A stretch of DNA of 63,418 nucleotides, the filler included, from Octopus bimaculoides (lineage: Eukaryota): assembly GCF_001194135.2 (NCBI RefSeq). It is 8 parts of 7 records of this genome, joined end to end, with 100 filler letters (N's around TTAATTAATTAA, not from the genome) between each part and the next. Parts side by side here need not be neighbours in the genome. Positions count along the whole stretch, not along the records: positions 4,564 to 30,646 come from NC_069000.1; 7 more parts are not named here. The stretch is one strand, 5' to 3'. The notes beneath the pieces were generated by a model, which did no database searches, was not told the DNA's origin, and saw only the letters and a list, made by a program, of their open reading frames with translations. How positions within the stretch are numbered: the first letter of the stretch is position 1; each line of letters begins with the position of its first letter. Shown here piece by piece: positions 13,820 through 30,421 of the stretch. Position numbers and translations under genes: made by a program.

Positions 13820-14502
13820 TGAATCTTTTCTGCAGCTCACAATCAATATAGCTGTGCAATGAAATATTACCTGGAAGCTGGTCTTGCTGCATCAAACTAC
13901 TTTTCCATTCCAGTACCTCACCCTATATATGATGAACAGGTAAGTTAATTAGTTTCTCTTCTGTCATGATGAATGATCTGTTGAAACAACCAAGTGTGTG
14001 TGTGTGTGTATAAGATTTCTGTAACATATATTTCTTTCTTCAGTTCCTCATAATCAATAAAGAAAATATTTTGAAATGTTCAGTCCATCTTTTTTTTCTC
14101 TTATTTTCCCAAACAGGTCTACAGAAAGATGATCAAATGTTGTTCCTATCTCCAGTGTCACACACAGGTATGGCATTACATTACTCTCACATTAGTTAGC
14201 TACCTGTCTGTCATAGTCTAATTGTTTTGCAGTCATACTTACTTTGGTCACACTTTATGTATCTGCCACACTTATATTGTCTGTTAGGGACACTGACATG
14301 GTGTACCCATGACGCTCACAGTGTCTGTGCACCACACTCACCTTCTGTTGTTGGTGCTTCCAGTACATTCTGTAAAGTGGTTGGTATTGGGAAGGGCATC
14401 CAGCTGTAGAAACCAAGTCAAAGCAGACTAGGGAACAGTGGTTCCCAACCCTTTTATTTAAATGAGTTTTCCCACAGACCCCTTTTAATATCCTTGTCCT
14501 TA

Positions 14503-14533
<31 letters not shown>

Positions 14534-15392
14534 TTGTATGTGAAATTTTGAATTTAGATCACGGACCCCCAGTGCTATCTTTGTGGACCCCAGGTTGGGA
14601 ACCACTGCTATGGAACCTGGCGTGGGCCCTGGCTTTGCTAGAATGGAAAACAGACATTAAATGATGATGATGATGATTGTGTATCTCATTTATTGTCTCT
14701 GTTGGCCAAACTCATCTGTGATTTACATATTGCCTGCTGGCCACACTTGCAGTGTGTATCTGCCGCACATTATCAAATGACAGGATGATGGTGATGACAT
14801 TTGCGATGACACTGATGAAGATGATGATGCTGCTGCTGTCCATAATGTCGTGTTTCTTTCAATCGAACAGGTTGCCATCCTTTGTCAGTTTCTTGAAAAC
14901 ATTGACTACACGACGGCGTTCAAAGCCCTTCAAGAGACGACCATCTACGATGCCCAAGACATCTACTACTACTTCATCTGGGACCTCAGCATTCTGGAAT
15001 TCCTCTCACGTATCCTTTATTTATTTATTTATTTTTTTTTTTTGGTCACAAACCACCTGAGACACTTCATCTTCAGACTGCATTTCTAATTAAATGTTGT
15101 TGTTGCTGTTTTAGCCCTAGGTCGATCCTCATCTTGTAGACTTGTAACCAGAAATTTCCTGGCCATGAACAAAATGTCTTCTTTTCACACAGTATATCTA
15201 GGACTACATTATCTAATGTACAATTTTTTTTGTAAGACAGTGTGTGAAATGATGAAGATTTAACTGCTATTTCTATTTCCTGTGTTGGCTCTTCTACCAT
15301 TGCTGTTCACTCCAAGTCAGCTTTGAACTATGCTGTCTCTTTTTATTCATACATAATCTATATAAATTCACCCTCTTGTCATACCCAGGAAC

Positions 15393-15465
<73 letters not shown>

Positions 15466-15642
15466 ACGATGGGTTTCTTTCAGTTTCCATCTATCAAATC
15501 CACTCACAGCTTTGAAATCCACTCACAGCTTTGGTCAGCTTAGGGCTATAGTAAGAGACATGTGCCCAAGGTGCCACTCAGCAGGACTGAACTCAAAACC
15601 ACATGGCTGTTGAGAAGCGAACTTCTTAAGCACATAACCAAC

Positions 15643-15682
<40 letters not shown>

Positions 15683-16379
15683 CTGAGCCCACTTGCTGAT
15701 ATGCACATGTACATACTTAACACAGATGTGCACCCCCCGCCCCTACACCTCAACCAGATGTACATAACAACTGAATCATCATCTAACCGTTGTTGTTGTT
15801 GTTAAGTCAGCGCAAAAATACCAGATAAGTTGTTGACTCACAAATTACAAACACACGCCAATGTGGTTGTCGTGGTGATTATGAAAACAGTAGCAGTGAC
15901 ATACCTTTATAAGGATTAAGGCAGAGGTGGTGTCGTCAGCAGCGGCAGCAGCAGCAATGATTGTTGTTGTTGTTGTTGTTGTTGTTCAGCTTGAACGCAA
16001 ATAGAATCTGACTATTAGCTATGTTTGTCCGAAACGTTGGTCTTTTGACCTGTTTCTTTAGAAATTTCAAGTGTTTGAATCTAAATTTGGAGAAATACGG
16101 AAAAAAAACTGAGACTCTCTACCATTCTATATTATTATATTTATGTTGTTATTATTATTGTTGTTGTTGTTGTTGTATAAAAGATGTTTTCTTTAAGTAA
16201 ACAGGAAGTATTATTCCGGTTTCTTTTCATCTCCACACCTTAGGTAATGCTCGCAGGCTACCATTTCCTTCTGACCAATATCGGTTGATTACCATGTAAA
16301 AGAAAAACCACTTGGCACCAGAAACTAAATGGCTTCATCTTTTGCCTGTTGTTGTTATTATTATTATTATTATTATTAC

Positions 16380-16419
<40 letters not shown>

Positions 16420-19400
16420 AAGTCATCCTTCCGGGGGTCGATAAAATAAAGCATCAGTCAAGTACTGGGATTGATGTAATTTGATGACCCCCTACTGCCC
16501 CCACTCCCAATCTTAGACCTTGTGTGTATGTTAGAAGCAATTATTATTTCAACTGGCAGAATCATTAGCACGCCAGGTACAAATGCTTAGCAGCATTTTG
16601 TCCGTCTTTATGTTCTGGGTTCAAATTCTGCTGAGGTTGACTTTACCTTTCATTGTTTTGTGGTTGATGAAATAAGCGTCAGTTGAGCCCCGGGGTTGAG
16701 GGAATCAACTTACTCCCTCCTCAAAATTGCTAGCTTTGTATCAAAAATTGTAATTATTATATTTATTATTATGAAGTGCTCCCTTCTGGGAGTCAATAAA
16801 ATAAAGTGCCAAGGTTGATGTAACTCAACCCCTTTCCATCCCCGATCCCAATTTTAGGCTTTTCTGTGGATGTTCGAAAGGATTATTATTCAAGCTGACA
16901 GACTCGTTAGAGCATCAGACAAAATGCCTTGCAGGATTTCTTCTCACTCTTTAAATTTCAAGTTCAAATCCTGCTGAAGTCAGCTTTGCCTTTTGTCCCT
17001 TTTGCCTTGATGAAATAAGACACCGGTCAAGTATTGAGGTTGATTTAATTGATTAACCGCCCCCTCTCCTCAAAGTTACTGACCTTGTGCCTAAATTAAA
17101 AAGAATTATTATCAGGTATGTTGATCCAGAGGTGTTGGTTTCAAGTGGATTGAGACCATAGAACCAACCAGAGGTGGCTATCGCAGGTAGATTGATATCA
17201 TCAGACCAACCGGAGGTGATGGTCTCAACTGAATATCTAACCCCCACCCCTGTTATATTTATGTAATTTCTTGTTGTGTCCGTGGCGTAGTAGATGGGTG
17301 GTAGAGTCGGTAGGATGTTGGAGGAAATAGTTTGTGGTATTTGGTGACAATGCTGACAGACTGAGATCAAATCCTAACCAGGCCAACTTTGTATTTTATC
17401 CTCAAGAGGGATAAAACGTATGAGGGTATGCTGAAAAGTTCCTGGCTTTAAAGGTATCTTGAAAGGCCTGGCTGGAGGCCCAACCTTCCAAGTTCTTTTA
17501 TAAGTCTCACAAAAACTGAAGGACCGCTGCAATAAGTGTGTGAATCTGAGAGGGGAATATGTTGAATAAAATCATAATTAACTGATCCTCCTGTATTTTC
17601 TTTTGCACAAAGTTAGGAACTTTTTAGTACTCCCTTGTGAGTACTTTTCACCAAAATAAGAACTAACACAATCGCCACCATTTGCAGCATTACTGCCCTT
17701 CCTTCCATGACCACTGCTTGCGACCACAACTTTCAGCAAGACTGATAATGCTACCGTTTCCACCATCACCAACATCACACCGTTGTCACTATCAGTAACG
17801 ATGGTACAAACACTGCCTCTGATTCCATATTCCTTGCCCACCCTACCCCACCCCAGCTCTCCACCCATCACCATTACTATCATCATCCCCACCAACACTG
17901 ACTACTATCACTACCACCACTACCACCATCATCATCATCATCATCACCATAGCAGAGGATCTTCTTCCAACCCCCTCCCCACCTCTCTCTTTCTCACTCT
18001 TTCCTCTTCCACTTTGCAGTTCAGAAGACATCGTTATTCTGCCCCACCGTTATTATTGTTGTTTTTGATGCTGATGTTGTTGTTTTTGTTATTGATGCTG
18101 CTTGTGTTGTTGTTGTTGTTGATGTTCCTTGCCTTTCTTCTTAATTACTTCGTTACCAGTGACTCTCACGTTACCTGGGAGGAGTTTCCTTTTGATAACC
18201 TTTTGTCATCTTCTTCTGCCATTGTTGTTGTTGTTGTTATGCCCCCTTAGCATAGTCACGTGTTCTCCCCAATTACTGTAAAGATTGACTATTGTATTTC
18301 ATTGACCCCAGCTGACAGTTTGATAGAAATGGTACAGTGCCAGATTAAATGCCTTGGCTGGCTCGAGGCTGTAGTTGAACACAGGATAACAGGGTGGGCG
18401 CACCCATTGACTGGAACTGTTTATAGAGAATTACAGAAAAGAAAGGTCGGCTGTGGTGTCAATTACTTGGGACAGACCTGTGTTAAGAAGCTTGGTTCCG
18501 TGGGATTGAACACGGAACCATGTGATATGGAAGCAAACTTAATACATGTCCACCCTAAGTAATTGACACCACAGCCGACCTTTCTTTTCTGTAATTCTCT
18601 ATAAACAGTTCCAGTCAATGGCTGCGCCCACCCTGTTATCCTGTTATAGCACCTAAGCCACCCACTAGACAGCCACTCAGGATGTAGCAATCTAGATATA
18701 GCTGTTACCCATCCAACCAGCCACTCTGGCTTTAGCACCTATCCACCTGCTAGACAGCCACTTTGTTTATAGCCCATTTCCCCACCCTGTCCACCCTAAA
18801 TGTAGCCCCTCCACCACTTATCCACTCTGGATGTAGCCTCCATCCACCTGGCTATCTACCATTCCACCCTGGATATAGTGCCCCCCCCCCACTTCCCAAC
18901 ATCTATCCTTCCACCCTGGATGTGGCCACCCTTAACCACCTCCAGCCACTCTCACTCCAGCTGCAGAACAAACGAATTTATCTGAAAAACAAATCGGTGA
19001 AGAGAATATTGTTTTTCCTTTATTTATCTTCTGGTTTTATTTTATACCCATATAAATATATACACAAATATTTTATGCATACACACATACACACACAGAT
19101 ATGTATATTCCCCACGTACTCTCACTGCCTCCCCCTTCACTCCCACCAATCTGGTTTTCACCATGGGAGTGGCTGTTACTGCTTTGAGGATATTTTAGTC
19201 GTGCAATCAGGAAATAGTTAGCAGAATTAACTTGGCTAATTTATCAACGGCATCAAGTGCTTCCTCACCACCACCACTGCTACTGCTGCTATCACCCCCC
19301 CCCCACCACTGCTTTGTCTGTGGCTTTTACAGCTTCTTTTTCGAACTTACCATCATCACCATCACTATCACCATTATCATCATCATTAACACAACCGTTG

Positions 19401-21049
19401 CCATAATTATCATTCTTCATTATCATAATGTCTGTTTTTATGATGCTAATGGAACCGATTTTCTGCAGAATATATTTCCACATCTCTCCCTCCTCCTCTC
19501 CCCTCTCCCTCCTCCTCTCCCCTCTCCCTCCTCTTCCAGGACATGCTGTAAAATGGTTGACATTAGGAAGGGCATCTGGCCATGTGAAAGTATTGGGTTG
19601 TTCAAAACGTTTGTGCCAATTTTTAAAGGAAAGAAAAAAGTCAATAAATACTTGAATTGACTTGAGGTGGTTTCATGGCAAATAAGTCGAAAGGTAAGCT
19701 ACAATAAATCGGCACAAACTTTCCGGACAACCCAATAGATATTATAGCATGATGCAGTTCTGTGACCTTTCAGATCCTGTCAAACTATTCTGCCTGTGCC
19801 AGCATGGAGCAGGGCTGTTGAATGGCAATGATAACGATAATTCACTCTCTGTTAGAAACCCTTAATTCTGAACTATCTATGAAATTGAGCCCCTTGTTTA
19901 TGGTCAAAATTTAAGCCTCGATTCCCCCATACAATTGTTTACATCTTTGATTTCTCAAATATTTTGTTTCTGAAATTGTTTAATGTGGAAGATTATATTC
20001 TTTAACGAGCAGATTTACATGCTAAACGAGGAGAACAGGTTAAGAAACAACAAGTCGTAAGTATTTACTTTCTTCAGTTTCATTCTTTTCCACAACTCTC
20101 AGAGCATGAAGTGCTCCTCACGAATGCACGTTCGTGAGATTGTGATCTGGAAACAGTTTTGAGTAGGAAGTTTTGAAAGAGAAGTATGAACATGCTTCTC
20201 TCAGTTTCCATCTACCAAATCCACTCACAAGGCTTTGGTCGGCCCGAGGCTATAGTAGAAGACACTTGTCCAAGGTGCCACGCAGTGGGACTGAACCCAG
20301 AGCAACCATGTGGTTGGTAAGCAAGCTACTTACCACACACCCACTCCTACGCAATATATACACACACTGAAAAAGCACACCGCAAACTGCGACAAATAAT
20401 AAAACAGAAATAGAGTTTTCAAAATTTATTGTTTCTGTGCAGCCGGGTGATTAGGGTCCCCTAGTCTAAGGGTTATATCGATTGCGGAGTCATTAGGCCA
20501 AATCCTTGCAACATCTATTTTTGCATGGTCATCAACAAGGGACATAACTCTCCTGAACGACTCTAATCTCCATTGTCTTATTTGTCCAAATATTCGATCA
20601 ACTTACGTTATTAAAGTTATCTCCCTTCTTTGATTTAGATTCTAAATACCTTTTCCCTGAGGGAGATTTTTTTATTTGCCACCAGTTGCTCGACTGATTG
20701 AAAAATGTCAACTCACAAACTGGTTTTGTTCCGTGTTTCGCAGTTGGGTGGTTATTGATATTTTTTCTTTATTTTTTGTGCCAATGGCTGTGGCCAAGCT
20801 GTAGCATTGTCGTTATTTCTTTTGAAAAACGTCCGTTTCTAATTTTTTTCCTTTGATTTCCCTTTTTTTTTTAAAATTCTTGTTTTTAACGAAACGTTTT
20901 CTTTATTTTTTTTTTCTTTATTGTTGTTTCAGATGAAAGCTCTGGGCCAGATGGATTTGAATGTCTGCAACCCTGAAGACATTCTGCAAGAAGCAACTCA
21001 GCACCGCAAGAACAACTTCCTTCGTTCACTGGCCAAATTGTACTTATGA
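4975..21049 (+). CDS. INTS8: Integrator complex subunit 8, 5'-partial spliced CDS (17 exons, about 613 aa visible)
   Basis: Exons joined at GT-AG sites give 1843 nt with consistent phases ending in TGA at 21047-21049. The translation matches the vertebrate INTS8 C-terminal two-thirds as I recall it, e.g. QVAILCQFLENIDYTTAFKALQE vs QVAILCQFLREIDYKTAFKSLQE, and NPEDILQEATQHRKNNFLRSLAKLYL* vs NPEEVLQLAAQRRKKKFLQAMAKLYF*. Confidence 0.96.
5923..5987 (+). CDS. INTS8: INTS8 visible exon 2 (VLSHAIKASNDTQREYLKGFT)
   Basis: tttatttcag acceptor, GTGAGT donor at 5988; phase 0 in, phase 2 out, matching both neighbours. Confidence 0.85.
6189..6361 (+). CDS. INTS8: INTS8 visible exon 3 (YLAQLLPRETKFVALLTKSDVYSYLTETERVEMLNFEDREDVFCEEISCDYGTMSYP)
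   Basis: Long pyrimidine tract then ccccag acceptor; GTATGT donor at 6362; open frame, phase 2 in and phase 1 out. Confidence 0.85.
7174..7307 (+). CDS. INTS8: INTS8 visible exon 4 (DSVSAVSEAERQILYECNPQKVEDLIIKLTQKWGRHPNQIMALTD)
   Basis: Poly-T tag acceptor, GTAAGT donor at 7308; phase 1 in, phase 0 out. Confidence 0.88.
7816..7926 (+). CDS. INTS8: INTS8 visible exon 5 (WQVPKPLRQMLESMPSSMQQTYAYILVGKSRHCLKLK)
   Basis: aacag acceptor, GTATGT donor at 7927; resembles human WEVP...LVYILMAKGLHCSTVK. Confidence 0.92.
8469..8670 (+). CDS. INTS8: INTS8 visible exon 6 (AYNMARDLLTSAMMAIKDYNFALTKHHQYQMLLVDLYQAD...VRSGQ)
   Basis: CT tract then gatcag acceptor; GTTTGT donor at 8671; phase 0 in, phase 1 out. 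Confidence 0.88.
9633..9742 (+). CDS. INTS8: INTS8 visible exon 7 (DTPPTPEVVEQAAVFLLNVKDWEYLSNMEGSSNGFIE)
   Basis: ttttag acceptor, GTAAGA donor at 9743; resembles human EECVAFMLNWRENEYL. Confidence 0.9.
10408..10492 (+). CDS. INTS8: INTS8 visible exon 8 (VSLLLARACKEINGTKTARKPARDFWEA)
   Basis: ctgtag acceptor, GTATGT donor at 10493; resembles human LGQLLAATCKELPGPKESRRTAKDLWEV. Confidence 0.93.
11211..11341 (+). CDS. INTS8: INTS8 visible exon 9 (VGNIFSDNLSQKRSITGRETMIHRNNSLAVMSKESFCQFIKKIK)
   Basis: Long poly-T tract then ctccag acceptor; GTAGGT donor at 11342; resembles human QHKRGNDGRVSLIKQRESTLGIMYRSELLSFIKKLR. Confidence 0.92.
11815..11874 (+). CDS. INTS8: INTS8 visible exon 10 (EPTILSFLISCLTKLYNILK)
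   Basis: ttttacag acceptor, GTTAGT donor at 11875; resembles human EPLVLTIILSLFVKLHNVRE. Too short for the ORF track. Confidence 0.92.
12380..12441 (+). CDS. INTS8: INTS8 visible exon 11 (DNISSEIFSNYITIWPTNIN)
   Basis: ttgtag acceptor, GTAAGA donor at 12442; resembles human DIVNDITAEHISIWPSSIP. Confidence 0.92.
12997..13115 (+). CDS. INTS8: INTS8 visible exon 12 (SSAMDTAALAECVSLLMHHALSQDPLNPSWLRTEADIQF)
   Basis: ttgcag acceptor (tandem CAG-TAG-CAG), GTAAGA donor at 13116; resembles human YTLSINPNNHSWLIIQADIYF. Confidence 0.93.
13836..13939 (+). CDS. INTS8: INTS8 visible exon 13 (AHNQYSCAMKYYLEAGLAASNYFSIPVPHPIYDEQ)
   Basis: ctgcag acceptor, GTAAGT donor at 13940; resembles human ATNQYSAALHYYLQAGAVCSDFFNKAVPPDVYTDQ. 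Confidence 0.95.
14117..14167 (+). CDS. INTS8: INTS8 visible exon 14 (VYRKMIKCCSYLQCHTQ)
   Basis: aaacag acceptor, GTATGG donor at 14168; resembles human VIKRMIKCCSLLNCHTQ. Confidence 0.95.
14436..14607. mobile_element. hAT-type MITE in an INTS8 intron
   Basis: Terminal inverted repeats CAGTGGTTCCCAACC ... GGTTGGGAACCACTG; 8-bp flanks ctagggaa / ctatggaa (7 of 8 identical) fit a hAT target-site duplication. Confidence 0.85.
14871..15009 (+). CDS. INTS8: INTS8 visible exon 15 (VAILCQFLENIDYTTAFKALQETTIYDAQDIYYYFIWDLSILEFLS)
   Basis: gaacag acceptor; ends at the U12-type donor GTATCCTTT (15010); strongest similarity to INTS8. Confidence 0.96.
17419..17638 (+). mobile_element. Internally deleted mariner-type element
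   Basis: Degenerate TIRs (tatgagggtatgctgaaaagttcctggcttt / aaagttaggaactttttagtactcccttgt); retains the transposase C-terminus-like KLKDRCNKCVNLRGEYVE*. Confidence 0.75.
18381..18644. repeat. 88-bp inverted repeat (87/88 identical) with an 88-nt spacer; probable MITE
   Basis: 18381-18468 is the reverse complement of 18557-18644 with one mismatch; the spacer includes a family-B SINE-like fragment. Confidence 0.9.
20013..20056 (+). CDS. INTS8: INTS8 visible exon 16 (HLHAKRGEQVKKQQV)
   Basis: Follows TTCTTTAAC-gagcag; GTAAGT donor at 20057; resembles human YLHHKRGETDKRQIA; phase 1 in, phase 0 out. Confidence 0.93.
20933..21049 (+). CDS. INTS8: INTS8 terminal coding exon (MKALGQMDLNVCNPEDILQEATQHRKNNFLRSLAKLYL*)
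   Basis: Long T-rich tract then tttcag acceptor; TGA at 21047-21049; resembles human IKAIGQTELNASNPEEVLQLAAQRRKKKFLQAMAKLYF*. Confidence 0.95.
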   Translation: MKALGQMDLNVCNPEDILQEATQHRKNNFLRSLAKLYL

Positions 21050-22699
21050 TGATGACGACGACGACGACGATGATGATGATGATGACAACAGTGATACACA
21101 AGTAGCAAGAGAGAAGGAAAGAGAGAGGATGATGGTGGTGGTGGTGGTGGTGGTGGAGGTGCTTGAGAAAAGGCACGAAGGAGAAGTGGACAGCAAGAGA
21201 AAGTGGAGACGACGGTGGGGGTGCGGGTGTGGGGTGGAGATGAGGGGAGGAAGAGGATAAGGGCGATGTGGTGTGTGTGTGTGGGTGGAGGGGATGAGGG
21301 TGGTGGGATCATCTTGTTGGTCCCAAATTGATGATACTTGAGAAAAGTTTGAAGTCTTCTCTGTGACACTAAGTTTTGTTGAAACACATTACCAACTTCC
21401 TGCCAATGATTGATACATTAGTAGTAGTAGTAGTAGTAGCAGCACTACTACTACTACTACTAGTCTTACTATCTCTGCTTGAAGTTCTCTTCATGACACA
21501 AATCTTAACAATATTTTTTTTTTTCTGGTCTTTCATTATTTCCAGACAAAAGAAGTTTTTGTTGTTTCCAAAACATTAAAAAAAACAACAACAACAACAA
21601 CAACAAAGAAAATGAACATAACAACAGCAGAAAACTTTCAACTCCCCTCCCCCACTCTTGCCAACATCTTTCTCTTCTTTCATTATTGTCTTTGTTTATT
21701 TAGGTTTTTATGTTTGCATAAGCCTTTCTACTATTGGTCAAGGCCTGAAATTTGGGGGAAGCGGACTAGTCGATTACATCACCCTCAGTGCTTCAGTGGC
21801 ACTTAATTTATCGACCCCGAAAGGATGAAAGGCGAAGCCATCCTTGGCAGAATTTGAACTCAGACCATAGCTGCAGATGAAATACCGCTAAGCATTTTGG
21901 CCAGCATGCTAAAGATCCTGCCAGCACACCACCTTAGCATACATAATAATAATAATAATAATAATCTCATCCACTGGCATGGTGCCACATCCCTCATTAC
22001 TGCATCATCCCCCCACCTCTCAGTTGTGGTGGTCTTTTCTTGCAAGTTACTTGGTGACCTCAGCCAGTGTTACATAAAAAGCATCCAGTACTCACTGCGA
22101 AGTAGTTAGTGTTGGGAAGGTTATCCAGCCATACAAATCATACCAAAGCGGATACTTGGAGCTTGGCACAGCCCTCTGGCTCATCAGCGTCTGTTAAACC
22201 AGCCAACCCATTTCGTCATGGAAAACAGATGTTAAACAGGGATGAGGATAAGAGACTCTAGAACTGTGATGAGTGGGGGGGGGGGCCTTTACTCCTAGTT
22301 TAGTATAGTAGGGTGCAGCATAGGTTACTTATCCTTAAATCAGAGATGTGGATGCAATACATCCAACAGAGTGGATGCCTCTAAAGCTAATCAAGGACCC
22401 TGGGTGGGGTGTTAGGAGTGTTAAACCAGATAAAGGATTCAGCAATGCTTGTGAAGACAAAAGCATTTCTCTCTCTGTCTCTCTCTCTTTCTTGTTCTTT
22501 CTGCCTATTTTAATTTTTAATCCACTTTTGTAATTTTATAATCATTGTAACAAACAAGTATCACAGTTCCATGATTATTTCTCATTAATCCATCAACTCA
22601 TTAAAGAATTATTCACACTAACTCATTAGGAGTATTTCAATGTCTTGTTTTCTCTTCTAAAGTAATAATAATAATAAAAATCGAAATCAAATCAAATTC

Positions 22700-23167: not shown

Positions 23168-23629
23168 TATAACAAACTTTGGTTGTAGAACAAACAACAA
23201 ATTTAAGGTCATCCAACTAATATATCACATCTCGAACATTTAATCCCATATAAAGAAACATAATGCTTTTTCTATACATAGAATACGGATGTACAAAATC
23301 ACTGAAGATGAAACAATACTTCATTTAAACAGGCATATATTTATTATTTTATTTTAAGTTTTATAATATATAAAAAATAAAAATTTTTTCTAGACACTGA
23401 AGTATTAATTTATTGATTTTTAAAAATATATTTTTTATACGCAATAGACTGTACTCACATTTTTCTATATGCCTGTCTAAATGTTTCATCTTCTGTGATT
23501 TTGTACATCCGTATTCTATGTATACAAAAAGCATTATGTTTCTTTATATGGGATTAAATGTTCGAGGTGTGATATATTAGTTGGATGACCTTAAATTTGT
23601 TGTTTGTTCTACAACCAAAGTTTGTTATA
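23168..23629. mobile_element. Foldback/MITE element with about 165-bp inverted arms
   Basis: 23168-23340 pairs with 23466-23629 apart from a few substitutions and one indel of about 8 nt; very AT-rich spacer; TA at both ends. Confidence 0.85.
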
Positions 23630-25698: not shown

Positions 25699-28593
25699 TA
25701 TTATCTGTTGTTGTTGTTCTCCTTCATCGTTTTCTTCTTCTTCTTCTTCATCAACAACAAAGAAGAATTAAACTGGAACATATGGCAATACTTCAGCCAG
25801 AACTCATCTCTATCTTGGAACAGCAACAACAACAACAAAAGCAAGATCAACAAGAACAACATCAACAACAGTCTTTTAGGTTACTTAAATGGGAACAGTC
25901 AGGGATTTGAAGTGAGAAAATCAGTTAAACGATAAAGAAATAGAAATAAAGTGAGGAAGCACAATTTTGATGGTGGTGGGCATGAAGAAGACTTGGGATA
26001 AAAACTCAATTAAAAAAATATATGAAACATGGTGCAGTGTTGCTGTTGGTGGTGGTAGTGGTGATGGTGGTGGTGGTTGTGTTAGAGGTGGTTCTGATGT
26101 TGTTACTGGTGGTGTTGGTGGATATGTTGCTGGTAGTGTTGTTAGTGGTGATGGTGGTGGTGGTGGTGATGCTACCATTCTGGTACCAATATAAACCCCA
26201 GACATTCTGTGCCAGATTTAATGGATTTCAATGGAGACAGATTCTGGAATCATTATTAGAGGGATTCCTGGCAGAATATATTTCACAGCCACCACCACCA
26301 CCACAACCACTACTAACACCAAAACCACCACCACTACCACTTTCAACAACACCACCAACACCATCACCACCAGCAACAGCACCATCACCACCACCCTTAC
26401 TACTATCATCAACACCATCACCATTACAATTACCACCACTATTATAAACACCATACCGTTATCATCAGCACTATCACAATCATTAACACCCTAACGTCAT
26501 CACCATCACCCTCCCACACACACATACACACCCCACATCGCCACCACCACCACTACCTAAAACAATGAAAGAACTGTAATTGACTGTCAGTGCCAAAATA
26601 AGTTTACCAAACTTTGATAAAGGTTTCCAGGTTTTCTATATTTATGAGAAAAAAAATAAATAAATAAAAATAAAAGAGCAAGTAGAAAAAAATTTTAAAA
26701 AGAGGAAAAAAAAAACGAGAGAAAAACAGTTTTCTGCCTTTGTTATTTGCCACAAGAGCAAGAAATGAGAAAAGATTAAGGAAATGGGTTGTGGATGGGG
26801 AGGGGGGAGGTTTTTATAGGTGGGTAAGGGGGGAGAGAAATAACAAGGAAAATATAGATGAAACGAAAAATATATAAAAAATATTAAAAAATATAAAATA
26901 TGTAATGTACACACACACACACACACGTGCGCGCATACATACACAAATATGTAGTCGTCATATGTCATTCCATAACGGCTACCTCTGAAGAGCACAAGGT
27001 TACACAATCGGACTGTTACCTAACAATCCGTCGAACCTCTAGTGCGAAACCAATTGGTAAGATCAGCCGTAATGGATATATAATATTGTACACTTCGATA
27101 TATATATATATGTATATTTATTTATTTATTGTTCAAATTTACAGAAAGCAAAAGACGCAGACAGATGAAGGAACAACAAGCAGGTATGTTTGTTTGACAC
27201 TCAGGAAGAATGGAAAAGACACTGCGCTCATCGACAGAAATGTGTTTATGAACATTTTTATGTTTACGTGTTTATAAAAATTGTCACAACTTTTGCGATT
27301 GGAAAACAAACAGTCCAGATTTAAATTGAAGCAGTGACCATAGTATAACATCTTTTAGTTTCTGGATACAGTCGTTGCTCTAAAATATCATCCACTTGTA
27401 AAATATTTGCCTTTGCGTATTCTTTGGGGTTTGAATAATTCACCTCTGGAAACATGGGCGTTTCATTCATCATCCTTAAACAACCCTTATTCAAAGATCT
27501 TTTGAGCAGTCTGGGTTACTTGATCAGAAGAAAATTCTAACTGTGCCCCACCTGCAAGGCCATGCGCTGTTTATCTTGATATGAGATCACTATGTCACAC
27601 ACATACGGATGTGATGCATGTGCCTGGTGTACCCTTATCAGACGGGTAGTAGTCATGGTGGGTATACTGGGCTTCATATATTTGTACCCCAGAAGATTAA
27701 GAACGAATAGAGAGAAATACAGAAATAGATTAATAAGAAATACGAAAAACAAAATGAAAACGAAGTATTACAGCTTTGGAAAACTAGAACGAAAAGAAAG
27801 GATGAAAGGCAAAATGATGAACTCTGAACGCAGAATGTAAAAAAACTAGGAGAAATGCTGCTAACGATTTTATCCGACGATTCTGCCAGCTCGATGCCTT
27901 TGGTTTCAAATTTTGGTACCAGACTAGCAATTTTAGGAGAAATGGAATAGGCGATTTCATCGATCTCAATGCTCAACTGGTATTGATTTTAACGAAACTG
28001 ATAGGCAAAGTTGACCTCGGTGGAAACTGAACTCAGAACGCAAAAAGCCGGATGAAATGCCGCTTAGCCAGATTTTGCCAGTAAAATAAAAATGGTTTCA
28101 AATTTTGGCACAAGAGTAGCAATCTTGGAGAAGTGTGTAAGTCGATTACGTCGACTCCAGTGTTTTACTGCTACTTAGTTTATCGACTCCAAAAGGATGA
28201 AAGACAAAGTCGACCTCGGCAGAATTTGAACTCAGAACGTAAAGACGGACGAAATGCCGCTAAGAATTTTGGCTGACGCTTTAACAATTGCGCTTTTCTA
28301 GCGCCCTATCCCAATACGAATCACCTCCAGATGTTCTGTAAACCAATATGTCCGAGATTACATATACGTCACAGATGGGAAAGTTTCCTTTAAAAAATTA
28401 GAAGGTTAGTCAAATATGGTGCTCAACATAAAGCTATTGTAAGCATTCTCTGCCAGACACTGGTGATGTTGGTACCTGGCCGAAATATCTGTCTACAGGA
28501 GGTTAATGTCTGCAAGAATATATGTATATATATATATATATAGAAAATTTTGTAAAAAGCTGAGAAAAAAGACAAGAAAAAACAACAACGCGA

Positions 28594-28683
<90 letters not shown>

Positions 28684-30421
28684 GGAGAGTGAGAGAGAGC
28701 TAGTATATGGATAGATATGCACTTACGCATATATACATATATATGTGTGTGTGTATGTATATGTATACACACACACACACACTCACACGTATGTATGTAG
28801 GGAAAGAAGCCAAGGTGCGAAGTGTGGTTCGAGTGTACTGAGAACTAAACGATGACTTCATAAAAGAATCGTATGAAAAGAGTTGTGTGTGTGTGTGTGT
28901 TCCCACTCGTCTTTGTATATGAGTATGCGCTTATGTATGTTTGTATGTATATATGTATGTTTGAGTGTGTGTATGTATGTATATGTGTGTGTACGTAACC
29001 AGGAAAATTAAGAACGAATAGAGAGAAATACGGAAATAGATTAATAAGAAATACTAAAAAAACAAAATGAAAACGAAGTATTACAGCTTTGGAAAAGTAG
29101 AACGAAAAGAAAATGTTACAAGAGTAGATTGTTAGATAAGATGAGGTTAAACCCAGAGGAGAGAAGTTCACTGAAGGAAGGTGGATAGCAAAACCTTGAT
29201 AATTGGCTGTCTTAAAAGAAGGGATTAAGACAGTGGTTTCCAACCGGGGCCCATACAAGATTCTGCTGTTAAAACTTATGTGCAATAAATCGATAATACA
29301 CAAGATATTTTGATTTTTTTTTTAATGCAGTTCCTAATAATATTTAATTAAAAGACTATGATGGCATTTCTTTTTTAACATGGGGTTCCAGTAGAAGAAT
29401 CAAGGGGTTTCATAGGCAGAAACTAGTGCATAACTGGTATTTAATTTATCGACCCTCGAAAGGATGAAAGGCTAAGTTGACCTCGGCGGAATTTGAACTC
29501 AGAACGTAAAGACGGACGAAATATCGCTAAGCATTTCGCCCGGCGTGCTAACGTTTCTGCCAGCTCACCGGTTAGACAGTTTCTGTCTACCAAATTCACT
29601 CACAAGGCATTGGTCTCTCGGGGCTATAGTTATGAGACACTCACCCAAGGTGTCGCTCAGTGGAGCTGAACCTGAAATCACCTGGTTATAAAGCGAGCTT
29701 CTTAGCCACACGGCCATACCTGCGCCTGATAAATATTATTAAAACACAACAACAAATAAATGCAAGGGAAATAACTCAAAAATTCAAATTGATAAAAAAT
29801 TCAAAAGGATGAGCAATATAGAGAGGAGTGAGTTTGATCGTCAATATATATAAGTACAACTGGCGATATATCTCGGCTTTATTAGACATCTTCATAGACT
29901 TGATCTTCAGGCGACTGAGCAAGCACACACACACACACACACACAAACACACCTGTACTTACATTAGAAATAGGATCGTAGCCGAATTTTCAAGTTTAAA
30001 TAACTGTGATTAACAATTTACTCAACCATGACATTCGCCTAGAAATTTAAGAAACCCTTTCCCTATGCCCGCCACCATCACCACCATCGCCACGACCACG
30101 ACCACCACGACTACCACCATCATCATCACCACTGATACGCCCCCCCCCCACAACCATCAACCCCCCACCAACATCCCTCAGCTCCATTAATATGAGTTTG
30201 GTTCTCGTTACATCGTAAACAATTTCATGAACGATCATCTCCAATGTCTCTAATTATACTCACTATATTTATAAAGTATGCATGTAAATATATAATATAT
30301 ATACATGTGCATGTATATATGTATACGTGACTTTGTGTGTGTATGTGTTTGTATGTATACATATATATATATGTGCATGATATACACATATACATACATA
30401 CATACATGCATACATATATAC

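What the first reader, a model, noticed from the sequence alone, without database searches (positions are those of the whole stretch)
15010..20012. A 5-kb minor-spliceosome (U12) intron near the 3' end of INTS8
Seen directly: the donor GTATCCTTT differs from all 15 other visible donors, a TTCTTTAAC branch motif lies just before the AG, there is no pyrimidine tract, and splicing restores ILEFLS-H-LHAKRGE. It is the longest visible intron of the gene. Established: Integrator processes snRNA 3' ends, INTS8 links Integrator to PP2A, and U12 introns can be rate-limiting. Inference: an snRNA-processing subunit gated by a minor intron could form a feedback loop. I cannot say whether this intron is already catalogued in other animals.
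Basis: partly seen in the sequence, partly recalled or inferred. Interest (0 to 1): 0.8.

Follow-up and report, generated by a model that had tools for sequence, protein, structure and literature searches.

The report
Conserved U12 intron in INTS8
The 5-kb gap near the end of this mollusc-like INTS8 gene is a minor-spliceosome (U12-type) intron, but it sits at the same spot as the INTS8 minor intron already catalogued in human and mouse, so it is a correct but ordinary finding.

Summary
Window 15010-20012 is a 5003-nt, phase-1 intron. Its donor is C|GTATCCTTT, its branch motif TTCTTTAAC ends 6 nt before the terminal CAG, and it has no pyrimidine tract. Splicing gives ILEFLS-H-LHAKRGEQVKKQQV, colinear with INTS8 orthologues and with Pfam TPR_INTS8 (E 1.6e-162).

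On a matrix built from catalogued human minor introns, the donor scores best of 3184 GT sites in the piece. The other 14 donors of the gene are ordinary U2-type.

The intron is not new. MIDB lists an INTS8 minor intron in human (160 nt, CTT|GTATCCTTT, TTTTCCTTAACT) and mouse (342 nt). I found U12 signals at the identical codon position and phase in a vertebrate transcript contig, a frog and the bivalve Tegillarca. A dragonfly and an ant have lost it precisely.

The Integrator/minor-spliceosome feedback idea is already published. In RNU4ATAC patient cells INTS8 retention rose only slightly and INTS8 protein was unchanged.

Two local peculiarities remain. The intron is 5 kb because of repeats, against 0.1-1 kb elsewhere. 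The branch-to-3' splice site spacing is 7-8 nt, against 11-13 nt in orthologues. U12 dependence itself was not tested; there is no RNA evidence here.

The parts
14871..15009 (+). INTS8 exon L (VAILCQFLENIDYTTAFKALQETTIYDAQDIYYYFIWDLSILEFLS plus the first base of the His codon)
   Evidence: tblastn to Mytilus and Mya INTS8, 66-72% identity; acceptor and donor chosen
15010..15018 (+). U12-type 5' splice site GTATCCTTT (preceded by CAC)
   Evidence: The 12-mer CACGTATCCTTT is identical to the SLC35E3 minor-intron 5' splice site in the MIDB table
15010..20012 (+). U12-type GT-AG intron, 5003 nt, phase 1
   Evidence: orthologous introns
15087..15089 (+). First in-frame stop (TAA) if the intron is retained, after 26 intron-encoded residues; the last 53 residues would be lost
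   Evidence: Read-through translation; sequence
15398..15681 (.). (AT)n and (AC)n microsatellites and a short repeat inside the intron
16355..17071 (.). (TTA)n plus three copies of a SINE-like interspersed repeat found at least 12 times in the piece
   Evidence: (families D4-D8),
18381..18644 (.). Inverted repeat inside the intron: 107-nt arms, 93% complementary, 50-nt spacer
   Evidence: I9
19998..20006 (+). U12-type branch-point motif TTCTTTAAC; candidate branch adenosines at 20004 and 20005, 7-8 nt before the intron end
   Evidence: The 9-mer occurs 28 times among MIDB branch sites
20010..20012 (+). 3' splice site CAG
   Evidence: It is the only AG that gives the conserved HLHAKRGE
20013..20056 (+). 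INTS8 exon M, 44 nt (completes His, then LHAKRGEQVKKQQV)
20057..20932 (+). Last intron, ordinary U2-type (GTAAGT donor; acceptor with 85% pyrimidine tract)
   Evidence: This position is kept in insects that lost the U12 intron
20933..21049 (+). INTS8 last coding exon (MKALGQMDLNVCNPEDILQEATQHRKNNFLRSLAKLYL, stop TGA at 21047-21049)

Best explanation
Window 15010-20012 is the mollusc orthologue of the ancient minor-spliceosome intron that sits between the third-last and second-last coding exons of INTS8 in vertebrates.

Mechanism, inferred from established knowledge of U12-type splicing. The U11/U12 di-snRNP recognises the intron as a unit. U11, and later U6atac, pairs with GTATCCTTT. U12 pairs with TTCTTTAAC, where the single C-to-T difference from TTCCTTAAC turns a G-C pair into G-U, and bulges one of the two adenosines. 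No pyrimidine tract or U2AF is needed. The first usable AG that keeps the conserved protein (CAG at 20010-20012) is the acceptor.

The product joins C|AT into a His codon and restores ...ILEFLSHLHAKRGEQVKKQQVMKAL....

If the intron is retained, translation stops after 26 extra residues at 15087-15089. That is upstream of the last exon junction, so the transcript should be an NMD or nuclear-retention substrate, or give INTS8 without its last 53 residues.

The 5-kb size reflects, at least in part, insertion of microsatellites and SINE-like repeats, not any embedded gene.
For: Shown here:
- Exact consensus donor and near-consensus branch motif, each unique in the window and each at the homology-defined boundary.
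- The donor is the best of 3184 GT sites on a matrix built from human minor introns, and the branch site is the best among the gene's 15 introns.
- U2 donor score is -0.4 against 4.9-12.7 for the other donors, and there is no pyrimidine tract.
- The spliced protein matches Pfam TPR_INTS8 end to end in one stretch, E 1.6e-162, and aligns without a gap to orthologues.
- The same codon position and phase carry T|GTATCCTTTC...TTCCCTTAAC(+10 nt) in a vertebrate contig (102-nt intron), C|GTATCCTTAC...AACCTTAAC(+12 nt) in Tegillarca (993 nt), and TTTCCTTGAC(+11 nt) in a frog.
- No Pfam domain in intron ORFs, and no Rfam or tRNA hit. About a quarter of the intron is demonstrably repeat.

From papers:
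- MIDB lists human INTS8 chr8:94876286-94876445 (160 nt, CTT|GTATCCTTT, BPS TTTTCCTTAACT) and mouse (342 nt, CTT|GTATCCTTC, TGATTCTTAACT) (PMC6717393). The exonic CTT fits ...Thr + T|AT (Tyr) of ILEYLT-Y.
- TTCTTTAAC occurs 28 times among MIDB branch sites.
- Molluscs are relatively rich in minor introns, and Octopus sinensis was surveyed (PMC10639083).
Against: There is no RNA evidence for this organism, so the junction rests on protein colinearity.

The branch adenosine is only 7-8 nt from the 3' splice site. The reported optimum is 11-13 nt (PMC3584512), and the three orthologues measured here show 11-13 nt. The motif 12-mer fits inside intronIC's -55..-5 search region by only one base.

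The branch score (8.6 bits) is below the training median (11.7).

The organism's own U11 and U12 snRNAs were not seen. That the human intron sits at the same codon is inferred from the vertebrate contig plus the MIDB exonic triplet, not from the human genome sequence itself.
Confidence: 0.9

Rival explanations
1. The intron carries U12-like motifs but is removed wholly or partly by the major (U2) spliceosome, as reported for a few GT-AG minor-like introns.
For: PMC10853781 notes that some U12-type GT-AG sites are spliced by both machineries. The short 7-8 nt branch-to-AG spacing is suboptimal for U12.
Against: The donor has C at -1 and C at +5/+6, with a U2 score of -0.4 against at least 4.9 for every other donor in the gene. 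No pyrimidine tract precedes the AG. Strict conservation of U12 motifs at this position from bivalve to vertebrates argues for selection by the minor machinery.
Confidence: 0.05
2. The donor is right, but a different 3' splice site is used some or all of the time. One candidate is the GAG at 20007-20009, an in-frame NAGNAG variant giving S-P-D-LHAK. Another is a site 11-13 nt after the branch point, for example after AC at 20017-20018, giving in-frame S-H-AKRGE.
For: The branch motif lies only 7-8 nt from the CAG. U12 3' splice site choice is described as distance-driven and error-prone (PMC3584512). Both alternatives keep the frame, as read directly from the sequence.
Against: Every orthologue has x-LH-x-(K/R)-(K/R)-GE with no gap. 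GAG would lie only 3-4 nt from the branch adenosine. GT-AC terminal combinations are disfavoured. A U12-LNA-sensitive 3' splice site with the branch A 8 nt upstream has been shown in vitro for Plcb3 (PMC8848931), so the short spacing can work.
Confidence: 0.1
3. One reading: the minor intron makes INTS8 output depend on minor-spliceosome activity. Because Integrator matures the U11, U12 and U4atac snRNAs, this would close a homeostatic feedback loop.
For: Four human Integrator genes carry minor introns, and 3'-extended snRNAs accumulate when U4atac is mutated (PMC6800510, PMC9881141). The intron is conserved from mollusc to vertebrate. Retention would give a premature stop. A vertebrate transcript contig retains only this intron.
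Against: In patient cells the INTS8 delta-PSI is small (about 6, and 1.6-16.5%) and INTS8 protein is unchanged, whereas INTS7 and INTS10 respond. A dragonfly and an ant lost the intron cleanly, so it is dispensable in those lineages. A pan-eukaryotic survey argues that minor-intron evolution may be largely neutral (PMC10639083). Nothing in the window bears on regulation.
Confidence: 0.12

Closest known systems
Human and mouse INTS8 minor intron (MIDB/U12DB; human chr8:94876286-94876445, 160 nt; mouse chr4:11208870-11209211, 342 nt)
   Same: Same gene, and GT-AG subtype with donor GTATCCTT(T/C). The human exonic triplet CTT fits Thr + T|AT. A vertebrate contig and a frog show the identical codon position and phase 1, between ILE(F/Y)L(S/T) and (H/Y)LHxKRGE. 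In both cases it is the second-last coding intron.
   Different: This one is 5003 nt, about 15-50 times longer, and repeat-laden. Its branch motif is TTCTTTAAC (human TTCCTTAAC, mouse ATTCTTAAC). The branch adenosine is 7-8 nt from the AG, against 11-13 nt in the orthologues I could measure.
Tegillarca granosa (bivalve) INTS8 intron, locus L004 20266-21258
   Same: Same position and phase; C|GTATCC donor giving a His codon C|AT; exon resumes ATTTACAT...; no pyrimidine tract.
   Different: 993 nt; consensus CCTTAAC branch motif 13 nt from the AG. The public gene model skips this part of the gene.
Minor introns of INTS4, INTS7 and INTS10
   Same: Integrator subunit genes that depend on the minor spliceosome, grouped with INTS8 in discussion of an Integrator/minor-spliceosome link.
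   Different: Different genes and positions. INTS7 and INTS10 show strong retention and protein loss in RNU4ATAC patients, while INTS8 does not (PMC9881141).
U11-48K and U11/U12-65K USSE autoregulation
   Different: It works through a tandem U11-binding enhancer that activates an upstream U2-type 3' splice site, not through rate-limiting removal of a U12 intron. I did not search for such an element, and nothing I read in the intron suggested one.

Membership tests
U12-type (minor-spliceosome) GT-AG intron | 5' splice site matching RTATCCTT from +1 | tested here: met
   GTATCCTTT at 15010-15018. It scores 14.3 bits on a matrix from 61 human minor sites, the best of 3184 GT sites. The 12-mer is identical to the SLC35E3 minor 5' splice site, MIDB scores 85.9 and 90.9.
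U12-type (minor-spliceosome) GT-AG intron | Branch-point sequence matching TCCTTRAC close to the 3' end | tested here: met
   TTCTTTAAC at 19998-20006 has one mismatch. It scores 8.6 bits, the best of the 15 introns, with 19 of 52100 12-mers as good. The same 9-mer occurs 28 times in the MIDB branch-site table, with scores of about 81-89 where the threshold is 65.
U12-type (minor-spliceosome) GT-AG intron | Short, constrained branch-to-3' splice site distance (optimum 11-13 nt) | tested here: inconclusive
   The distance is 7-8 nt here, against 11, 12 and 13 nt in the vertebrate, frog and bivalve orthologues. The optimum is from PMC3584512. The motif is still inside intronIC's -55..-5 window, and an 8-nt case was U12-dependent in vitro (PMC8848931).
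U12-type (minor-spliceosome) GT-AG intron | No polypyrimidine tract before the 3' splice site | tested here: met
   55% pyrimidine in the 20 nt before the AG, most of it the branch motif, against 65-95% for the other acceptors.
U12-type (minor-spliceosome) GT-AG intron | Poor fit to the U2-type donor consensus | tested here: met
   Crude U2 donor score -0.4 against 4.9-12.7 for the other 14 donors. C at -1, +5 and +6.
U12-type (minor-spliceosome) GT-AG intron | Orthologous to an accepted U12-type intron in other species | tested here: met
   Identical position and phase with U12 signals in L001 (vertebrate), L004 (Tegillarca) and the 3' half of L005 (frog). Human and mouse INTS8 minor introns are listed in MIDB.
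U12-type (minor-spliceosome) GT-AG intron | Removal depends on U11, U12, U4atac and U6atac | not testable with these tools
   This needs knock-down or inhibition experiments in the organism.
U12-type (minor-spliceosome) GT-AG intron | The host organism has a minor spliceosome | not tested
   No snRNA gene was found in the piece (Rfam) and the organism is unidentified. The literature reports molluscs as relatively minor-intron-rich (PMC10639083).
INTS8 (Integrator complex subunit 8) | Full-length match to the INTS8 TPR domain profile and to named orthologues | tested here: met
   The spliced 484-aa model matches PF25756 TPR_INTS8 at E 1.6e-162, profile positions 5-488 of 488, in one stretch. 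Best hits are INTS8 of Mytilus, Mya, Bulinus and others.
Minor-spliceosome/Integrator feedback circuit | INTS8 output changes with minor-spliceosome activity, and this alters snRNA 3' processing | not testable with these tools
   Only human data exist. They show small delta-PSI and unchanged INTS8 protein in RNU4ATAC-mutant cells (PMC9881141).

The most novel reading that the evidence does not exclude
In this lineage the conserved INTS8 minor intron may have drifted into an unusually inefficient configuration: 5 kb long, a G-U-weakened branch helix, and a branch adenosine only 7-8 nt from the AG. Its removal could then be truly rate-limiting and make INTS8, and so Integrator, sensitive to minor-snRNP levels. 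That would be a lineage-specific tightening of the proposed Integrator/minor-spliceosome loop. Alternatively, the short spacing could mean that 3' splice site rules for U12 introns are looser in this clade.
Probability: 0.08. Interest if true: 0.45.

Novelty: already known. Interest (0 to 1): 0.15.

Why it matters
It matters little beyond correct annotation.

The intron is a bilaterian-age minor intron of a gene already on every human and mouse minor-intron list. The regulatory idea attached to it is already in print.

It has practical value for annotation. Four public gene models mishandle exactly this intron, either skipping the 44-nt exon, truncating, or reading through: Mya P0003, Tegillarca P0004, frog P0013 and the vertebrate contig P0011. 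Anyone annotating this genome should force the 15009|20013 junction.

The short branch-to-AG spacing and the clean losses in two insects are small data points for studies of minor-intron evolution.

Tried and rejected
- Nested gene or RNA in the 5-kb intron: rejected. Four of the nine ORFs of 90 aa or more that overlap it had no Pfam hit, the rest look like low-complexity sequence, and there is no Rfam family or tRNA.
- A second U12-like donor: ATATCCTTG at 14488, inside the preceding intron, and GTATCCAT on the minus strand at 13014. Both are consistent with chance and neither abuts coding sequence.
- Alternative branch sites further upstream in the last 55 nt: none scores near TATTCTTTAACG.
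- Fetching the Mytilus and Mya loci failed; those proteins are not on record.
- The frog donor exon lies in or near a 258-N assembly gap, so only the 3' half could be read.
- The primary papers on branch-to-3' splice site distance (PMC86782, PMC60238) are not held. I relied on the review PMC3584512 and on PMC8848931.
- No cephalopod or near-identical protein was returned, so neither the organism nor a same-clade transcript could be established.
- Downstream region 21-30.6 kb: the six ORFs I scanned, of the twelve of 100 aa or more, had no Pfam domain. I treat it as repeat-rich intergenic or 3'UTR sequence.
Full report
WHAT IS THERE

The piece (window 4564-30646) carries the 3' two-thirds of an INTS8 gene on the + strand.

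A rough concatenation of open exon stretches hit only INTS8 proteins, all carrying Pfam PF25756. The hits were Mytilus, Mya, Tegillarca, Bulinus, a dragonfly, an ant and a frog.

I used tblastn of those proteins and a frame-aware search for GT..AG pairs. This gave a model of 16 exons and 15 introns. The last coding exon is 20933-21049, with stop TGA at 21047-21049. The spliced 484-aa model matches Pfam TPR_INTS8 over profile positions 5-488 of 488 in one stretch, E 1.6e-162.

CHECK OF THE OBSERVATION

- **Boundaries.** Exon L ends ...ATT CTG GAA TTC CTC TCA C at 15009 and the intron opens GTATCCTTTA. The intron ends ...GATTATATTCTTTAACGAGCAG at 20012 and exon M starts ATTTACATGCTAAACGAGGAGAA.
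- **Phase and product.** The intron is phase 1. C|AT makes His, giving ILEFLS-H-LHAKRGEQVKKQQV, then the last exon MKALGQMDL....
- **Colinearity.** This aligns without a gap to the orthologues, for example Mytilus ILEFLV-H-LHTRRGEMDKRQTA-MKALSQLDL.
- **Motif uniqueness.** GTATCCTT and TTCTTTAAC each occur once in the window on either strand. Chance expectation is 0.81 and 0.50, and both sit exactly at the homology-defined edges.
- **Other donors.** All 14 are U2-type with G at +5, scoring 4.9-12.7 on a crude U2 matrix. This donor scores -0.4.
- **Acceptor.** The region is 55% pyrimidine, most of it the branch motif, against 65-95% elsewhere.
- **Length.** 5003 nt against 177-1091 nt for the other introns.
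- **Correction.** My count is 14 other donors in the piece, not 15.

QUANTITATIVE CLASSIFICATION

intronIC and SpliceRack matrices were not available. I built matrices from 61 human GT-AG minor 5' splice sites and 83 human branch sites copied from the MIDB supplement (PMC6717393).

| Element | Score here | Training median | Rank in the piece |
|---|---|---|---|
| Donor CACGTATCCTTT | 14.3 bits | 15.2 | Best of 3184 GT sites; other donors of the gene -19.5 to +2.4 |
| Branch 12-mer TATTCTTTAACG | 8.6 bits | 11.7 | Best of the 15 introns; 19 of 52100 12-mers as good |

- The donor 12-mer is identical to the SLC35E3 minor 5' splice site listed for human and mouse, with MIDB scores 90.9 and 85.9.
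- The 9-mer TTCTTTAAC occurs 28 times among MIDB branch sites. Similar 12-mers there score about 81-89, where the database threshold is 65.

ORTHOLOGY

MIDB lists a minor intron in both mammals:
- Human INTS8: chr8:94876286-94876445, 160 nt, CTT|GTATCCTTT, branch TTTTCCTTAACT.
- Mouse Ints8: 342 nt, CTT|GTATCCTTC, branch TGATTCTTAACT.

I fetched genomic or transcript loci for the homologues.

| Locus | Organism | State at this codon position |
|---|---|---|
| L001 | Vertebrate INTS8 transcript-like contig from an ENA assembly | Reads ...ILEYLT then T\|GTATCCTTTC...GCTTCCCTTAACTTCGTGTCAG\|AT CTC CAC CAC AAG; 102-nt intron, same position and phase, retained in frame |
| L004 | Tegillarca granosa (bivalve) | C\|GTATCCTTAC...TAACCTTAACAACTTAAATCAG\|ATTTACAT, 993 nt |
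| L005 | Frog | 3' half reads TTTCCTTGACCAGTTCTTCAG\|ATTTGCATCAT; the donor exon falls in an assembly gap |
| L003 | Ladona (dragonfly) | Exons fused at this point; the next, U2-type intron stays in place |
| L006 | Lasius (ant) | Exons fused at this point; the next, U2-type intron stays in place |
| L002 | Bulinus (gastropod) | Last ~270 residues encoded with no intron at all |

The human exonic triplet CTT fits ...ACT T|AT, that is Thr then Tyr of ILEYLT-Y. The intron therefore predates the protostome-deuterostome split and has been lost in some lineages. The direct statement that the human intron splits this codon is an inference from L001 plus the MIDB triplet. I could not read the human genome.

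MECHANISM

The mechanism is inferred from established U12 biology; only the motifs are shown here.
- U11 (then U6atac) pairs with the donor.
- U12 pairs with TTCTTTAAC. From my knowledge of the U12 5'-GUAAGGAA-3' element, the C-to-T change relative to TTCCTTAAC converts one G-C pair to G-U.
- One of the two adenosines (20004 or 20005) is the branch point.
- No pyrimidine tract is needed.

If the intron is retained, the frame reads RILYLFIYFFFLVTNHLRHFIFRLHF and stops at 15087-15089. That removes the last 53 residues. The stop also lies upstream of the final exon junction, so NMD is expected (criterion as in PMC6717393).

WHAT IS UNUSUAL

1. **Size.** About a quarter of the intron is microsatellite or matches repeats elsewhere in the piece. 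These include (AT)n, (AC)n, (TTA)n and (TTG)n, three copies of a SINE-like family, and a 107-nt inverted repeat. The intron ORFs I scanned had no Pfam hit, and no RNA family or tRNA was found.
2. **Spacing.** The branch adenosine lies 7 nt (8 for the first A) from the last intron base. The three orthologues show 11, 12 and 13 nt, and the reported optimum is 11-13 nt (PMC3584512). The 12-mer still falls inside intronIC's -55..-5 window, by one base (PMC7367187). A U12-LNA-sensitive site with the branch A 8 nt upstream has been seen in vitro (PMC8848931). I therefore treat the spacing as suboptimal but workable. In-frame alternative acceptors exist: GAG at 20009, or a site after 20018. They would break the conserved xLHxKRGE motif.

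THE FEEDBACK IDEA

Four human Integrator genes (INTS4, INTS7, INTS8 and INTS10) are known minor-intron genes. Cologne et al. 2019 (PMC6800510) and the 2022 NAR study (PMC9881141) already discuss defective Integrator as a consequence of minor-spliceosome failure.

In those data INTS8 retention changed little: delta-PSI 1.6% in fibroblasts, 16.5% in LCL, and about 6 in the 2022 study. INTS8 protein was unchanged, whereas INTS7 and INTS10 fell.

The clean loss of the intron in two insects shows it is dispensable there. Nothing in this window tests regulation.

VERDICT

The intron is real and U12-type by every sequence criterion except an atypically short branch-to-AG spacing. It is the orthologue of a catalogued human and mouse minor intron, and the attached hypothesis is already published with weak support for INTS8. 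Novelty: already known. Interest: low.

The organism was not identified. The best protein hits are molluscan at 37-51% identity. A cephalopod is my guess from the repeat landscape only.

Noticed in passing
L001:829-930 (ENA ERZ21820016 contig, vertebrate INTS8): This transcript-like contig has its internal introns removed and a 3'UTR with AATAAA. It still retains the 102-nt U12 intron, which is in frame and stop-free, so the gene caller read through it (protein P0011). This is anecdotal support for slow removal of this intron in a vertebrate.
   Followed up: partly
L003:7815-8009 (Ladona fulva) and L006:2134-2475 (Lasius niger): Both insects encode ...LEFLVHLHAKRGE... or ...LEYLIYLHTKRGE... 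in one exon, a precise loss of the U12 intron. The following U2-type intron (after KQQA / KQLA) is kept at the same position as in the window.
   Followed up: yes
L002:3988-4791 (Bulinus truncatus): The last ~270 residues of INTS8 are encoded in a single uninterrupted ORF. At least six intron positions present in the window are absent. This suggests a retrocopy or 3'-biased intron loss. A 500-N gap within the locus was not placed relative to the gene.
   Followed up: partly
proteins P0003 (Mya), P0004 (Tegillarca), P0013 (frog), P0011: Public gene models mishandle exactly this intron. Mya and Tegillarca skip the small exon, the frog model truncates at ALQEQNR, and P0011 reads through. This looks like a systematic annotation failure at U12 introns.
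   Followed up: partly
window 14781-14870: The reading frame of exon L stays open 90 nt upstream of its acceptor. An in-frame alternative acceptor at 14783 (ATGACAG|GATGATGG) would add an acidic 29-residue insert, DDGDDICDDTDEDDDAAAVHNVVFLSIEQ, that the other orthologues lack. The dragonfly model has an 8-residue insert at this point.
   Followed up: no
window 14488-14496: ATATCCTTG, an AT-AC-type U12 donor-like motif, lies on the + strand inside the preceding U2-type intron. It does not abut coding sequence and is within chance expectation.
   Followed up: partly
window 5252-5772, 6417-6564, 8740-9167, 10647-10882, 16431-17071 (+); 21739-21965, 28085-28289, 29454-29573 (inverted): A SINE-like interspersed repeat of about 200-330 nt occurs at least 12 times in both orientations at 61-87% identity. 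It often abuts (TTA)n or (ATT)n runs. It has no tRNA or Rfam match.
   Followed up: partly
window 23168-23629: A near-perfect inverted repeat (148-nt arms, 98% complementary, 166-nt spacer) lies downstream of INTS8. It looks like a foldback or MITE-like element. A weaker one (107-nt arms, 93%) lies inside the U12 intron at 18381-18644.
   Followed up: no
window 21047-21090: The stop codon runs straight into a (GAT/GAC)n trinucleotide repeat. The 3' flank up to about 21450 is low-complexity, G-rich then (AGT)n.
   Followed up: no
window 6579-6588: A 10-N assembly gap lies inside the intron between exons X2 and A.
   Followed up: no
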